A stretch of DNA of 63,794 nucleotides, the filler included, from Octopus bimaculoides (lineage: Eukaryota): assembly GCF_001194135.2 (NCBI RefSeq). It is 8 parts of 7 records of this genome, joined end to end, with 100 filler letters (N's around TTAATTAATTAA, not from the genome) between each part and the next. Parts side by side here need not be neighbours in the genome. Positions count along the whole stretch, not along the records: positions 1 to 21,873 come from NC_068986.1; 7 more parts are not named here. One strand, 5' to 3'. A model generated the notes under the pieces. The model searched no databases. It saw nothing but the letters and a program-made list of their open reading frames with translations, and was not told the origin of the DNA. The stretch's first letter is position 1. Every line of letters starts with the position of its first letter. Both the position numbers and the translations under genes were made by a program. This document shows, in pieces, positions 1,169 through 10,008 of this stretch.

Positions 1169-2014
1169 NNNNNNNNNNNNNNNNNNNNNNNNNNNNNNNN
1201 NNNNNNNNNNNNNNNNNNNNNNNNNNNNNNNNNNNNNNNNNNNNNNNNNNNNNNNNNNNNNNNNNNNNNNNNNNNNNNNNNNNNNNNNNNNNNNNNNNNN
1301 NNNNNNNNNNNNNNNNNNNNNNNNNNNNNNNNNNNNNNNNNNNNNNNNNNNNNNNNNNNNNNNNNNNNNNNNNNNNNNNNNNNNNNNNNNNNNNNNNNNN
1401 NNNNNNNNNNNNNNNNNNNNNNNNNNNNNNNNNNNNNNNNNNNNNNNNNNNNNNNNNNNNNNNNNNNNNNNNNNNNNNNNNNNNNNNNNNNNNNNNNNNN
1501 NNNNNNNNNNNNNNNNNNNNNNNNNNNNNNNNNNNNNNNNNNNNNNNNNNNNNNNNNNNNNNNNNNNNNNNNNNNNNNNNNNNNNNNNNNNNNNNNNNNN
1601 NNNNNNNNNNNNNNNNNNNNNNNNNNNNNNNNNNNNNNNNNNNNNNNNNNNNNNNNNNNNNNNNNNNNNNNNNNNNNNNNNNNNNNNNNNNNNNNNNNNN
1701 NNNNNNNNNNNNNNNNNNNNNNNNNNNNNNNNNNNNNNNNNNNNNNNNNNNNNNNNNNNNNNNNNNNNNNNNNNNNNNNNNNNNNNNNNNNNNNNNNNNN
1801 NNNNNNNNNNNNNNNNNNNNNNNNNNNNNNNNNNNNNNNNNNNNNNNNNNNNNNNNNNNNNNNNNTACATACATACATACATACATACATACATACATAC
1901 ACACATACATACATACATACATACATATATACATACATACATACATACATACATGTATACATACACACATGCATGCATGCATGCATACATACATACATAC
2001 ATACATACATACAT

Positions 2015-3367: not shown

Positions 3368-3552
3368 AAGGTAGTGAACTGGCAGAATTGTTAGCATGCT
3401 GGATTAAATGCTTAGTGACATTTCGTTCGTGTTTACGTTCTGAGTTCAAATGTCACCGGGTTCGACTTTGCCTTTCATCCTTTTAGGGGTCGATAAAATA
3501 AGTTCCAGCTGAGTACTAGAGTCGATGTAATCGATTTAGTTCCTTCCTCGAA
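3368..3552 (+). mobile_element. SINE family B, 3' tail truncated at the junction with the GC-rich rDNA-linked block
   Basis: A-box-like ctggcagaattgttag, B-box gagttcaaat, family body ctttgcctttcatcc. Confidence 0.85.
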
Positions 3553-4160
3553 ACTGCATACGAATCGGGCCCGATAGGATCCACTGGGTCATCAGACCCT
3601 CCCGCATAGCCAAGGAGGACCCCGCCCCGTATAGCAAATGCGAATTACACAAAGTCGATGCGACCACCCGTACAGTTGACGCGAACCCCTGCATAGCTGA
3701 CGCGACTGCATGGACGCCCCAAAACCTACGTCTCAGGTACACGCAAACCAACTTGGTGCGATGGAATCCGCCAGGCTGCCCCTGAGCAACAAGGGAAGGC
3801 AGACAAGCTCTGCACCCTACAGACTGGGAGCATAGTTCGGAACCTTAACACACAAGCAGGATCATCCAGAACACAAAGAGGATCACCCAAAGATGATAAT
3901 ATACCTCCGATCGGCCTCAAACACGGAAAAAGTACCACCAATGAACGGACGCAACAACCGATGACCGACGATCCCAATACATCTCGGTCGTCTCGTCCCG
4001 GATCTAGCAGGCTCTCCCACGGTAAACGGTACCGCTATGAGAGATTGGGACGTTTTTAATTTTTCCAAATTGGAGGGACCAATTCGGTATGGTTGGATTT
4101 CCCGGCATAGCTCCGACCATGGAGTTAAGCTCTTTTATCGCGATAAGGTTGCGTCCCAGA
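3553..4160 (-). mobile_element. Putative 5' end (5'UTR and start) of a 28S-specific R2-type retrotransposon
   Basis: GC-rich non-rRNA sequence begins where 28S homology ends, at the canonical R2 target; no R2 protein motif seen. Confidence 0.55.
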
Positions 4161-4167
4161 AAGAGTC
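4075..4167 (-). ncRNA. Candidate HDV-like self-cleaving ribozyme spanning the 28S/R2 junction
   Basis: Manual fold gives P1, P2, P3, L3, P1.1, P4 and J4/2 in HDV order, with a few mismatches. Confidence 0.5.
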
Positions 4168-4555
4168 ATAGTTACTCCCGCAGTTTACCAGCAATTGGCT
4201 GAATTTCATCACTTTGACATCCAGAGCACTAGGCAGAAATCACATCACGTCTGTGCGGCTCAGCCGGCTACGCGAAGCTCTGTTTTAATGAGAAAGTCGA
4301 TTCTCCTGGTTCGTACCAGTTCCAAGTCGACCGTTCGGGGCCAGTCAAACACCTGCCTCACATCGTAGTGTGACGACCGATCCTACGCGAGGAGGAGCTG
4401 GATCGCGCGCACCGATGTGACGGTGAGCTCGAAGCCGTGTCGCCCACAATGTCCAAGGTGTGGGGCCCTGTTGATCGCACCCACTACGCCCCGGACTATG
4501 AAACCGCACGCCGCCAGACGACGGTATCCGAACGTGCTCAGAGGCGCTGCACGGG
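4161..4555 (-). pseudogene. 28S rRNA fragment: conserved core 4161-4345 plus probable GC-rich expansion segment
   Basis: + strand agagtcatagttactcccgcagtttacc...tttcatcactttgacatccagagcactaggcagaaatcacatc...gtaccagttccaagtcg matches the reverse complement of the conserved LSU core upstream of the R2 site; extent beyond 4345 is inferred from GC content. Confidence 0.85.
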
Positions 4556-5244
4556 TTCTTTAAGGATGCTGAACGAAATACCCTTGCTCTACTAGTAAGG
4601 GTGATGTGGTCTTGTGGGGTTTCTACTAGAAGCCTTCGGAAGTTTCTGTTCTTTTGGGGAATAATTGCTTGGATTATTGCTGAATTTTTTCGCAATCATT
4701 CTTTTTACACGCCTCTCATCATATCGTATTGTATCGTCCTGTGTTGTCCTCCATCACTTTTGTAAACCATTAATCGTCAAGAGTAGTAGTAGGAGGAGGA
4801 GGAGGGGGGAATACCAGTAACAGCAGCAGTTGTGCTGTTGTTGTTTGCTTAATAAAAGGTGAGATATCCATTTGTTATTTACCCGGAACCATGATTAAGA
4901 TTGAGATGTGACAGTTTGCAACGACGCCCTTAAAAATAACAATGGTTAATAGAGAGTTCGGGATAGATAAAGTAGCTAATATTGAAACATTATATACTGG
5001 GTTTTATATACAAAATTACATTGAGCACACTTACACACTTTCTCCTTACCCTTCTTTCTCTGTCCCTCCCCCTTCTCTCTCTCGGTATATGTATGTGTGT
5101 GTTTGTATGAGAATGTGTGTGTCTGTGTGCATGCGTGTTTGTATAGGTGTGCTTGCAGATATATATGTGGGTGTATTTGTATGTGTATGCACTTATAAGG
5201 ATATAAATATATGGATGCATTTCCATACCTTTGTGTACATATAC

Positions 5245-5741: not shown

Positions 5742-6597
5742 GGATCTTTTTGGTTTGACGGGCAAAATTTTTCATTTATGTTTTATGTAGTGTTTTTGGT
5801 ACCGAAACACTTTCAAACTTCGTATACTTGTATATTTTGTGTTATAGAACAGATAAAAAATTTTGTATTCGAAATTATTTCATGTAAAAAATTGTCGTAT
5901 TTCGGTAATTTCAACCAATCACGGACGTCTATTGAGGTGAAAACAATTACTGCCGTAGAATGTAAACAACATATTCTAACGGTGTTATGGGATCTTTTCC
6001 CTTGAATAAAATTAGTGCCCTGTTTGTCAACAACAACTATCGGTGGTACTGTTATTTATGACATCGTTCGTGCGTTTGTACTGGTTTTAGCTTTAGGATT
6101 ACGGTTAGGGTTATGATTATTTTTGCCATAACCTCACTCATAACCTTAACCCTAACCCTAAAATCCTATAACTCATAACCCTAACCCTAACCCTAACCCT
6201 AACCCTAACACTAACCCTAACCCTAACCCTAACCCTAACCCCAACTCTAACCCTAAAACCCTAACCCTAACTCTAAAACCCGAACCCTAACCCAAACGCA
6301 CGAACGATGTTATAAATAACTACCGCCGATAGTTGTTGTTGACAAACAACGGCACTAATTTTATTCAAGGGAAAAGATCCCATGACACCGTTAGAATATG
6401 TTGTTTACATTCTACAGCAGTAATTGTTTTCACCTCAATAGACGTCAGTGATTGGTTGAAATTACACAAATACGACAACTTTAACATGAAATAACCTATT
6501 AGAAAAAAATGTTTTATATGACACATTCTACCAGTATCCCAGGTTTGAAAGTGTTTCGTTAAGAAAACAAGTGTTGCCCGTCAAACCAAAAAGATCC
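5742..6597. mobile_element. Foldback MITE with ~305-337 bp TIRs, 8-bp TSD CAGAATGG and a telomeric-repeat core
   Basis: Arms 5742-6078 and 6293-6597 are reverse complements; CAGAATGG at 5734-5741 and 6598-6605. Confidence 0.9.
6085..6293. repeat. Interstitial telomeric repeats: degenerate TTAGGG then (CCCTAA)n
   Basis: Many CCCTAA units at about 6145-6293; TTAGGG-like units at 6085-6117. Confidence 0.9.
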
Positions 6598-7284: not shown

Positions 7285-7534
7285 NNNNNNNNNNNNNNNN
7301 NNNNNNNNNNNNNNNNNNNNNNNNNNNNNNNNNNNNNNNNNNNNNNNNNNNNNNNNNNNNNNNNNNNNNNNNNNNNNNNNNNNNNNNNNNNNNNNNNNNN
7401 NNNNNNNNNNNNNNNNNNNNNNNNNNNNNNNNNNNNNNNNNNNNNNNNNNNNNNNNNNNNNNNNNNNNNNNNNNNNNNNNNNNNNNNNNNNNNNNNNNNN
7501 NNNNNNNNNNNNNNNNNNNNNNNNNNNNNNNNNN

Positions 7535-7760
7535 TATATATATATATATATACACAATATATGAGTATATGCATATATATGTACATGTATGTACATACCT
7601 TCATCTACATGTACATATAGATACATAACTGGGTACATGACGTGGCAAAAGAATATGGACAAAATGATAAACAAGGTACAACAAACAAGCAGGCCACATA
7701 GAAACATCTCCTTCATCAGTTGCCACCATTAAAACACCGGCGTTTCGAAGAATTAAGGCA
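7535..7760. mobile_element. Non-autonomous repeat associated with (TA)n; related copies at about 37970-38195 and 57597-57860
   Basis: Shared gagtatatgcatata...acatctacatgta...ttcatcagttgcc...gcgtttcgaag architecture in three copies. Confidence 0.7.
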
Positions 7761-9475: not shown

Positions 9476-9579
9476 TATAAAGAGTTGTCCACTTATTTAT
9501 TTATAGCAAGGCCACAGTATTTCGTTTTGAAGCCATAATATACTACTAAGTATATTAAAGGTATGCAAGTCATTATTGT

Positions 9580-10008
9580 GGCAAGCTGGCAGAAACGTTA
9601 GCACGCCGGGCAAAATGCTTTGCGGTATTTCGTCTGTCTTTACATTCTAAGTTCAATTTCCGCCGAGGTCGACTTTGCTTTTCATCCTTTCGGGGTTGAT
9701 TAAATAAGTACCAGTTACGCACTGGGGTCGATGTAACCGACTCAATCCGTTTGTCTGTCCTTGTTTGTCCTCTCTGTGTGTAGCCCCTTGTGGACAGTAA
9801 AGAAATAAGAAACGTTAGCACGCCGGACGAAATGCTTAGCGGGATTTCGTCTGTCTTTACGTTCTGAACTCAAATTCCGCCGAGGTCGACTTTGCTTTTC
9901 ATCCTTTCGGGGTCGATAATTTAAGTACCAGTTGCGTGCTGGGATCGATCTAATCGACTGGCTCTCTCCACAAAAATTTCGGGCCTTGTGCCTAGACTAG
10001 AAAAGAAT
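9580..10008 (+). mobile_element. Composite SINE: B body + Tx1-like tail (9743-9809) + second, 5'-clipped B copy
   Basis: Two B bodies separated by a 67-nt linker; same structure at 59166-59586. Confidence 0.9.

What the first reader, a model, noticed from the sequence alone, without database searches (positions are those of the whole stretch)
3553..4555. Orphan 28S rDNA fragment ending at the R2 target site and continuing into a non-rRNA sequence
Seen: on the minus strand, conserved 28S sequence reads GGTAAACTGCGGGAGTAACTATGACTCT. Canonical 28S continues CTTAAGG^TAGCCAAATGCC, but here it switches to TTCTGGGACGCAACC and about 600 nt of GC-rich non-rRNA sequence. Established: TTAAGG^TAGC is the R2 insertion site, and the downstream rRNA helices are too conserved to have simply diverged. 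Inference: this is a 28S/R2 5' junction, i.e. evidence for an R2-type element in this lineage, relocated outside the rDNA array. About 400 nt of upstream 28S is retained, so it derives from DNA or an uncleaved co-transcript, not from ribozyme-processed R2 RNA. No R2 zinc-finger ORF is visible in the retained piece.
Basis: partly seen in the sequence, partly recalled or inferred. Interest (0 to 1): 0.78.

Follow-up and report, generated by a model that had tools for sequence, protein, structure and literature searches.

The report
Dead 28S fragment broken at R2 site
This is an old, silent, single-copy scrap of the large ribosomal RNA gene that breaks off within seven bases of the spot where R2 jumping genes insert and runs into about 575 bases of unrelated non-coding DNA. 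It is probably a fossil of such an insertion, but nothing in the retained piece proves it.

Summary
On the minus strand, a 28S pseudogene fragment (about 4555 to 4162) ends at ...GACTCT. It then switches to about 575 nt (4161 to 3587) that is neither rRNA nor coding, and this abuts a SINE. The join is not an assembly artefact. Independent contigs from at least 10 runs of the species span it at single-copy depth, and three related species carry the orthologous locus at about 92% identity. The 28S part has about 10% substitutions, including 11 of 95 universally conserved positions. There is no RNA coverage, so the locus is an ancient dead relic.

The R2 reading is only partly supported.

For it:
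- The break lies 7 nt 5' of the canonical R2 nick.
- A second, independent single-copy 28S fragment elsewhere in the genome breaks 1 nt away and continues with an unrelated sequence.
- The first dozen bases of the insert have two perfect downstream complements, which allows an HDV-ribozyme-like fold.

Against it:
- No ORF, zinc finger, RT or Pfam domain, and no Rfam ribozyme hit.
- No 3' junction.
- No multicopy relatives.
- The four low-copy paralogous pieces of the insert are not seen next to 28S.
- The genome holds many other orphan 28S scraps.

Rival explanations are a template-switch chimera and end joining. Interest is modest.

The parts
4162..4555 (-). 28S rRNA pseudogene fragment. The conserved core is 4162-4330 (the helices just 5' of the R2 target). 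An expansion-segment part runs from 4331 to about 4555. The 5' limit is approximate.
   Evidence: Rfam hit 4124-4298. True rRNA reads from DNA and RNA lie on 4232-4299 and 4450-4517, with homologous loose ends. 84/95 conserved columns are identical.
4155..4161 (-). Junction bases TTCTGGG (TTCGGGG in the orthologues). They are either heavily mutated CTTAAGG or added/foreign bases. The join lies somewhere in this stretch.
   Evidence: Read directly from the sequence. The orthologues carry A>C at + strand position 4158.
3587..4161 (-). Non-rRNA, non-coding insert of about 575 nt. It is G+T-rich on the 28S-sense strand, single copy, and not transcribed in the RNA run examined.
4148..4158 (-). The 5'-terminal dozen bases of the insert (UGGGACGCAAC). 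They have two perfect downstream complements and are the candidate P1 5' strand.
   Evidence: P 0.004-0.007 against shuffles, post hoc.
4046..4052 (-). CGUCCCA, the first perfect complement of 4158-4152.
3947..3967 (-). Candidate P3 (CGG/UUG), L3 (UCAUCGG) and P1 3' strand (GUUGCGUCC, complement of 4156-4148) of an HDV-like fold.
   Evidence: 12% of shuffles give a hit of this kind, so this is unproven.
3879..3886 (-). Candidate P2 3' strand (GUGAUCCU), pairing with 3975-3968. It lies in a short tandem duplication, so a second register exists at 3858-3865.
   Evidence: The pairing is not kept in paralogue A (differences listed).
3590..3650 (-). Short, roughly 24-nt tandem motif at the far end of the insert (TTGGCTATGCGGGAGGGTC-like). 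The repeat number varies between species and paralogues.
   Evidence: A 24-nt extra unit is present in the orthologues at 3605. Loose ends of paralogues A and D carry the same motif.
3368..3586 (+). Copy of the very abundant tRNA-like SINE of this genome. Its tail abuts the far end of the insert.
   Evidence: Repeat families D8/D10/D11/D15, alignment A1, and read depth in the thousands.

Best explanation
The locus is a fossil with no present function. A piece of an rDNA unit carried an insertion at the R2 target site of 28S. It left the rDNA array either as DNA or as a reverse-transcribed, uncleaved 28S/element co-transcript. It landed in unique DNA and has since decayed neutrally. What survives is about 390 nt of 28S, the 5' junction, and the first roughly 575 nt of the inserted element. 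That 575 nt would be its 5' UTR, or an internal or 3' non-coding part if the copy was 5'-truncated. The rest was lost where a SINE now abuts it.

Shown: the breakpoint, its position, single-copy status, age, neutrality and lack of coding capacity.

Inferred: that the inserted sequence was an R2-type (restriction-like-endonuclease non-LTR) element, and that its 5' end folded into a self-cleaving ribozyme.
For: - Position: 28S likeness ends at 4162, 7 nt 5' of TTAAGG^TAGC. A random end within +/-7 nt of one given site in a 28S of several kb has a chance of roughly 0.3-0.5%.
- It is a real break, not divergence.
- A second, independent single-copy 28S-like contig (E, seen in runs X1, X3, X4 and X5) breaks 1 nt further on. 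It reads GACTCTC|GTCTCTGATATTC..., only 6/30 identical to canonical 28S. Its next roughly 570 nt are unlike this insert. This pattern is expected for differently 5'-truncated or different copies at one target site.
- The insert's first dozen bases have two perfect complements downstream (P about 0.005).
- The only fold passing a strict HDV-like descriptor starts exactly at the junction. It has an 8-bp P1 that includes the GG that could be 28S -2/-1, and an L3 of UCAUCGG against UCCUCGC in HDV. R2 ribozymes commonly have P1 spanning 28S bases and long J1/2 loops (PMC3774820).
- The insert is non-coding and structured, like a UTR.
- R2 is known from one mollusc, an oyster, and there it is not strictly 28S-specific (PMC5035012).
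- The locus is genuine and old: 0-difference contigs in many runs, an orthologue in 3 other species at about 92%, and a 28S part about 10% diverged from the live rRNA.
Against: - The retained piece has no R2 hallmark: no ORF, zinc finger, Myb, RT or RLE and no protein relatives.
- No HDV-like family appears in Rfam even at E <= 10.
- A relaxed ribozyme descriptor finds as many hits in shuffles as in the real sequence. The strict one still hits 12% of shuffles. P1.1 and J4/2 are not canonical, and the proposed P2 is broken in paralogue A.
- No 28S resumes anywhere in the window.
- No multicopy relatives at >=80% exist in DNA of four species.
- Four single-copy paralogous pieces of the insert (A 3621-4051, B 4002-4094, C 3763-3883, D 3631-3713) are not seen next to 28S. 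B is flanked by (CA)n.
- The genome holds at least 8 other short orphan 28S-like pieces with other end points, so rRNA scraps arise here by other routes as well.
- The break is at -7, not at the nick.
Confidence: 0.45

Rival explanations
1. Template-switch chimera. A LINE reverse transcriptase copying the RNA of a dispersed, low-copy retroposon (the insert family) jumped at that RNA's 5' end onto 28S rRNA and copied about 390 nt of it, as in U6/L1-type chimeric retrocopies. The shared end at GACUCU(C) would then mark a preferred 3' end of a 28S RNA species. One candidate is the upstream product left when an R2 ribozyme or endonuclease cuts an interrupted 28S transcript.
For: - The insert belongs to a dispersed low-copy family whose other members start at different 5' points (4094, about 4051) and are not next to 28S.
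- Many short orphan 28S-like pieces with varied ends exist in this genome.
- The order 5'-rRNA piece / 3'-other sequence is that of known chimeric retrocopies (my own knowledge of Buzdin-type U6/L1 chimeras, not tested here).
- Contig E has the same 28S end with an unrelated partner.
Against: - No poly(A) or LINE/SINE-type tail at the insert's far end (sequence).
- No target-site duplication was found around 3587-4555 by inspection.
- A jump onto intact 28S gives no reason for the R2-site coincidence in two loci. The version that does explain it still needs an R2-type cut in the lineage.
Confidence: 0.25
2. End joining or a later unrelated insertion. Either an rDNA end broken near the R2 target (by an R2 endonuclease or another fragile-site break) was ligated to unrelated DNA, or an unrelated mobile element happened to land in an orphan 28S fragment and the downstream 28S was later lost.
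For: - The two loci (this one and E) share the break to within 1 nt, yet their partners are unrelated.
- The insert has non-28S-linked paralogues.
- Up to 7 bases at the join could be resection or filler.
Against: - A random insertion hitting this site has a chance below 1%, and it would have to happen twice.
- The significant self-complementarity of the insert's very first bases suggests a true element or RNA terminus rather than an arbitrary DNA end.
Confidence: 0.17
3. Rearranged rDNA. The 575 nt are an old version of the intergenic or transcribed spacer, joined to a broken 28S gene in a scrambled rDNA orphan.
For: The sequence is G+C-rich, non-coding and contains short tandem motifs. Spacers evolve too fast for a roughly 10%-decayed relic to match today's spacer at >=80%.
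Against: - No high-depth reads lie on any part of the insert in four species.
- No RNA reads lie on it.
- This gives no reason for the R2-site break.
Confidence: 0.06
4. Artefact, or simple divergence of an uninterrupted 28S pseudogene.
For: The cmscan alignment limps on to 4124 with low posterior probability.
Against: - Independent contigs with 0 differences span the join in many runs.
- The orthologous contig of another species spans 3488-4230.
- The insert is no more like canonical downstream 28S than shuffles are.
Confidence: 0.01

Closest known systems
R2 non-LTR retrotransposons: 28S/R2 5' junctions and R2-bearing rDNA fragments found outside the rDNA array (described for Drosophila genomes; my own knowledge)
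   Same: The break is at or next to TTAAGG^TAGC. 28S lies upstream in the same reading direction. A small target deletion or extra bases at the 5' junction occur in species whose R2 junctions are variable (PMC3774820). The start is non-coding and could fold.
   Different: There is no ORF, no proven ribozyme, no 3' junction and no copies in rDNA detectable here. Relatives of the insert lie away from 28S. The break is 7 nt upstream of the nick.
HDV-like self-cleaving ribozymes at R2 5' ends (Eickbush and Eickbush 2010; PMC3774820)
   Same: The nested P1/P2/P3 topology can be drawn with P1 starting at the junction. L3 has U at position 1 and G at position 6. J1/2 is long, as in arthropod R2.
   Different: P3 is weak (one G-C and two G-U pairs). 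P1.1 and the J4/2 C-N-R-A motif are not recognisable. There is no covariation and no Rfam hit, and the fold is statistically marginal.
Chimeric retrocopies made by LINE template switching (U6/L1, 5S/L1 and similar; my own knowledge)
   Same: A small-RNA or rRNA piece sits at the 5' side and is fused to a 5'-truncated piece of another repeated sequence. The locus is dispersed, single-copy and dead.
   Different: No tail and no target-site duplications were seen. The rRNA end coincides with the R2 site in two loci.
Oyster R2-1_CGi (formerly R2NS-1_CGi), the only mollusc R2 in the 2016 survey (PMC5035012)
   Same: It is a mollusc, and its copies lie both next to 28S and elsewhere.
   Different: The oyster element is defined by its RT/RLE ORF and a 3' junction. 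Neither is available here, and no sequence comparison was possible.

Membership tests
R2 (28S-specific RLE non-LTR retrotransposon) | Inserted at the 28S site TTAAGG^TAGC, in the 28S sense orientation | tested here: inconclusive
   28S likeness stops at -7 (4162). The next 7 bases differ from CTTAAGG only by transitions, so the join lies between -7 and -1. The orientation of the insert cannot be told without an ORF.
R2 (28S-specific RLE non-LTR retrotransposon) | Single ORF with N-terminal zinc finger/Myb, RT, and C-terminal CCHC plus restriction-like endonuclease | tested here: not met
   All three minus frames of 3587-4161 carry stops, and the longest open stretch is 102 codons. No Pfam family at E <= 1 in six frames. 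No protein relatives. No ORF of any known kind elsewhere in the window. Only about 575 nt are retained, so a UTR-only remnant would also fail this test.
R2 (28S-specific RLE non-LTR retrotransposon) | 3' junction with 28S resuming at TAGCCAAATGCC | tested here: not met
   No match with up to 3 mismatches in the window. There is a single LSU hit in the window. The insert ends against a SINE.
R2 (28S-specific RLE non-LTR retrotransposon) | Copies reside in units of the rDNA array | not testable with these tools
   No multicopy reads at >=80% lie on the insert in four species. However, a live element would have diverged beyond that threshold.
HDV-like ribozyme (as at R2 5' ends) | Double-nested P1/P1.1/P2/P3/P4 fold, with a catalytic C in J4/2 and a conserved U and G in L3 | tested here: inconclusive
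   One candidate starts at the junction: P1 4156-4149/3954-3947, P3 3967-3965/3957-3955, L3 UCAUCGG, P2 3975-3968/3886-3879. 12% of shuffles give a comparable hit. The relaxed descriptor performs no better than shuffles. There is no Rfam hit. P1.1 is not formed, and P2 is not kept in paralogue A.
Template-switch chimeric retrocopy | The 3' partner is a retroposon or mRNA 3' end with its tail, and the whole unit is flanked by target-site duplications | tested here: not met
   No tail likeness to the window's SINE/LINE tails. No poly(A) and no duplication were found by inspection. The far end is masked by the abutting SINE, so the test is weak.
Functional 28S rRNA gene | Intact conserved core, multicopy, transcribed | tested here: not met
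   11 of 95 universally conserved positions are changed. Depth is single-copy. No own-sequence RNA reads.

The most novel reading that the evidence does not exclude
Octopods carry, or long carried, an R2-type 28S-specific element that has never been described in cephalopods. Its 5' end forms an HDV-like ribozyme whose P1 spans the 28S/element junction. This ancient relic and the much less decayed, independently broken fragment E would then be two snapshots of tens of millions of years of activity. A variant reading: 28S RNAs cut at the R2 site served repeatedly as acceptors for LINE template switching, seeding the genome's orphan rRNA scraps.
Probability: 0.3. Interest if true: 0.5.

Novelty: new member of a known kind. 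Interest (0 to 1): 0.3.

Why it matters
If the R2 reading is right, this would be the first trace of an R2-type rDNA-specific retrotransposon in cephalopods. The 2016 survey read here (PMC5035012) lists only an oyster among molluscs, and searches of the held papers found no octopus or cephalopod R2. It would also give a dated fossil, older than the split of at least four related species, for following how long such elements persist.

It has no bearing on the organism's present biology. The locus is a silent pseudogene fragment. As it stands, the finding is a lead for a proper repeat-library and rDNA long-read survey, not a discovery.

Tried and rejected
- Diverged 28S instead of a breakpoint: rejected.
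- Assembly chimera: rejected.
- Coding remnant of R2: six-frame translation, Pfam at E <= 1 and a search of the large protein collection with the 102-codon open stretch all gave nothing.
- Known RNA family in the insert: only chance-level snoRNA/sRNA hits.
- Ribozyme with P1 in 28S at -28, -13 or -9, as in many arthropod R2s: no convincing partner. UCCCUCC at 4077-4071 pairs with -28..-22 with one mismatch, but it leaves no room for J4/2 (by inspection).
- Idea that the insert's far end carries the tail of the local SINE/LINE family: no likeness beyond shuffles.
- Idea that junction contigs E, F and H share a common insert 5' end (TCTG...ATCG): dropped. Pairwise agreement of their loose ends is at random level (agreement 0.65-0.68 for two sequences). 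H probably just continues as 28S.
- Likeness of the insert to the rest of the window: none.
- Reading the differences of E/F from the window to date them: the tool listed none because the contigs are too short.
- Papers on R2 in octopus or cephalopods: none found in the library.
- Checking present-day rDNA units for insertions: not possible.

Full report
**What is there.**
On the minus strand the window holds a fragment of eukaryotic large-subunit rRNA. Rfam's LSU model matches 4124-4298 (87.8 bits, E 1e-19, model positions 2136-2328). The match is good up to GACUCU (4167-4162): 84 of 95 universally conserved columns are identical. Over the next 13 columns it is 6 of 13. The canonical continuation CTTAAGG^TAGCCAAATGCC, which contains the R2 target, is absent here and anywhere else in the window. 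Instead come TTCTGGGACGCAACC... and about 575 nt down to about 3587. These bases are no more like canonical downstream 28S than dinucleotide shuffles are, so this is a breakpoint, not decay.

Upstream of the core, reads of the live rRNA (DNA and RNA runs) also lie on 4232-4299 and 4450-4517. Their unaligned ends continue homologously with a few transitions and a 3-nt indel. The 28S piece therefore runs to roughly 4555 and includes an expansion segment, about 390 nt in all.

At the other end, 3368-3586 is a + strand copy of the genome's hugely abundant SINE. The non-rRNA piece is thus 3587-4161 rather than 3553-4160.

**Is the join real, and how old is it?**
Logan contigs of 1676, 1495 and 1774 nt from different runs cover the whole region with no differences, at the same depth as the unique flanks. 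All of the species' DNA runs that were indexed hold the sequence.

Three other species labels share 7-12% of its 31-mers. Their contigs lay down as an orthologous locus. One 1014-nt single-copy contig spans 3488-4230, covering the SINE, the insert and the junction, with 56 substitutions in 743 nt. Separate contigs cover both unique flanks.

The substitution rate between species is similar in the insert (about 7.5%) and in the 28S part (4 in 69), so nothing is under selection. The 28S part differs from the live rRNA by about 9-13%, all of it on the relic's lineage. That is roughly 2.5 times the per-lineage divergence between the species, so the relic clearly predates their split. An RNA run gives zero coverage of the insert. 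The locus is an ancient, silent, single-copy relic.

**What is the 575 nt?**
- All frames carry stops.
- No Pfam family appears at E <= 1 in six frames.
- The longest open stretch finds nothing in the large protein collection.
- Rfam finds nothing credible.
- It matches nothing else in the window and not the SINE tail.

At 80% likeness, four single-copy paralogous pieces exist elsewhere in the genome:
- A: 3621-3713 plus 3808-4051
- B: 4002-4094
- C: 3763-3883
- D: 3631-3713

None is seen joined to 28S, and B is followed within 30 nt by (CA)n. The insert therefore belongs to an old, low-copy dispersed family. The 66 nt nearest the junction (4095-4160) have no paralogue at that threshold.

**Evidence bearing on R2.**
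The position is the strongest point. A chance end within 7 nt of one named site of a gene several kb long is a few per thousand.

A second line emerged from the reads. Another single-copy 28S-like contig (E) was found in four runs. It follows the window from 4207 to 4162, then reads GACTCTC|GTCTCTGATATTCAAAAAAATCGAGATAT. That is 6/30 identical to canonical 28S, and its next roughly 570 nt are unlike this insert. E carries the consensus letters where the window is mutated (4193, 4194, 4199). It therefore descends from live 28S independently of the window's copy. Two independent fragments broken 1 nt apart, with unrelated partners, are what differently truncated or different copies of a site-specific element would leave.

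Caution is needed. A third contig (H) probably runs straight through the site as 28S: 10 of the 16 letters that can be deconvolved are canonical. A fourth (F, 74 nt) is too short to judge. At least eight further orphan 28S-like scraps overlap this 180-nt stretch with other end points (4195, 4209, 4249; 4261 three times). This genome therefore makes rRNA scraps by other routes too.

**Ribozyme.**
R2 elements start with an HDV-like ribozyme. P1 often includes 28S bases and J1/2 is long (PMC3774820). The first dozen bases of the insert (4158-4148) have two perfect complements downstream: CGUCCCA at 4052-4046 and GUUGCGUCC at 3955-3947. This happens in 0.4-0.7% of shuffles (post hoc).

A strict descriptor (8-bp P1, 3-bp P3, 6-8-nt L3 starting with U and with G near its end, P2 of at least 6 bp, and a C before P2) finds exactly one P1/P3/L3 set, starting at the junction:
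- P1: 4156-4149 / 3954-3947
- P3: 3967-3965 / 3957-3955
- L3: UCAUCGG
- P2: 3975-3968 / 3886-3879

However, 12% of shuffles also give a hit, and a relaxed descriptor does no better than shuffles. P1.1 and the J4/2 motif are not recognisable. The P2 pairs are broken in paralogue A (differences). The ribozyme is therefore possible but unproven.

**Weighing.**
I put 0.45 on a relic of an R2-type 5' junction carried out of the rDNA.

I put 0.25 on a template-switch chimera between a dispersed retroposon RNA and 28S RNA. This explains the non-28S paralogues and the many rRNA scraps. It explains the position only if the 28S RNA ended there, which again points to an R2-type cut.

I put 0.17 on end joining or an unrelated later insertion, 0.06 on a rearranged rDNA spacer, and about 0.01 on artefact.

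The membership tests for R2 that could be run either fail (ORF, 3' junction) or are inconclusive (exact site, ribozyme). The test for copies in rDNA could not be run. I therefore do not file it as an R2 element, only as most likely made by one.

**Novelty and value.**
R2-bearing rDNA fragments outside the array are known from insects, and R2 from one mollusc (PMC5035012). My searches of the held library for R2 in octopus or cephalopods found no such report. If confirmed, this would be a new member of a known kind and a useful dated fossil. As it stands it is a modest lead. Interest 0.3.

Noticed in passing
window 5880-6490: A foldback-like structure. Arms of about 130-170 nt are inverted and about 95% complementary (5888-6019 and 6351-6482). 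They enclose an interstitial telomere-like array, (CCCTAA)n with variants, at 6126-6300.
   Followed up: no
window 9545-12175 and 21465-21873: A cluster of at least seven head-to-tail or nested copies of the same roughly 230-nt tRNA-like SINE that abuts the finding. Reads of this family reach depths of thousands in DNA and hundreds in RNA.
   Followed up: partly
elsewhere in the genome (contigs laid on window 4162-4345): At least eight single-copy orphan 28S-like scraps of 50-140 nt lie embedded in unrelated sequence. Their ends recur at 4261 (three contigs) and near 4162 (contigs E and F). This genome seems unusually rich in dispersed rRNA fragments.
   Followed up: partly
window 4230 (orthologue in organism C): In one related species the orthologous contig leaves the window at 4230 and continues for 233 nt with AT-rich unrelated sequence. 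The 28S part there is interrupted or partly deleted.
   Followed up: no
window 3600-3650 and 3760: Indel variation between species. There is an extra 24-nt unit (ATAGCCAACGCGACCCCACCCCCT) at 3605 and an 18-nt insertion at 3760 in the orthologues. The same roughly 24-nt motif continues in paralogues A and D.
   Followed up: no
window 4552-4640: Immediately beyond the 28S piece lie two + strand motifs resembling the 3' tails of the local SINE/LINE family (CCCTTGCTCTACTAGTAAGGG, GGTCTTGTGGGGTTTCTACTAGAAG), with a depth peak of thousands. The relic sits between retroposon debris on both sides.
   Followed up: no
The cause is unknown: possibly the tool leaving out reads that match human DNA, or alignment clipping. 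It blocks any view of present-day interrupted rDNA units.
   Followed up: no
window 1170-1860, 7285-7555, 15290-15820, 16980-17360, 18250-19230: Long runs of N (assembly gaps) are flanked by microsatellites. ORFs reported across them are meaningless.
   Followed up: no
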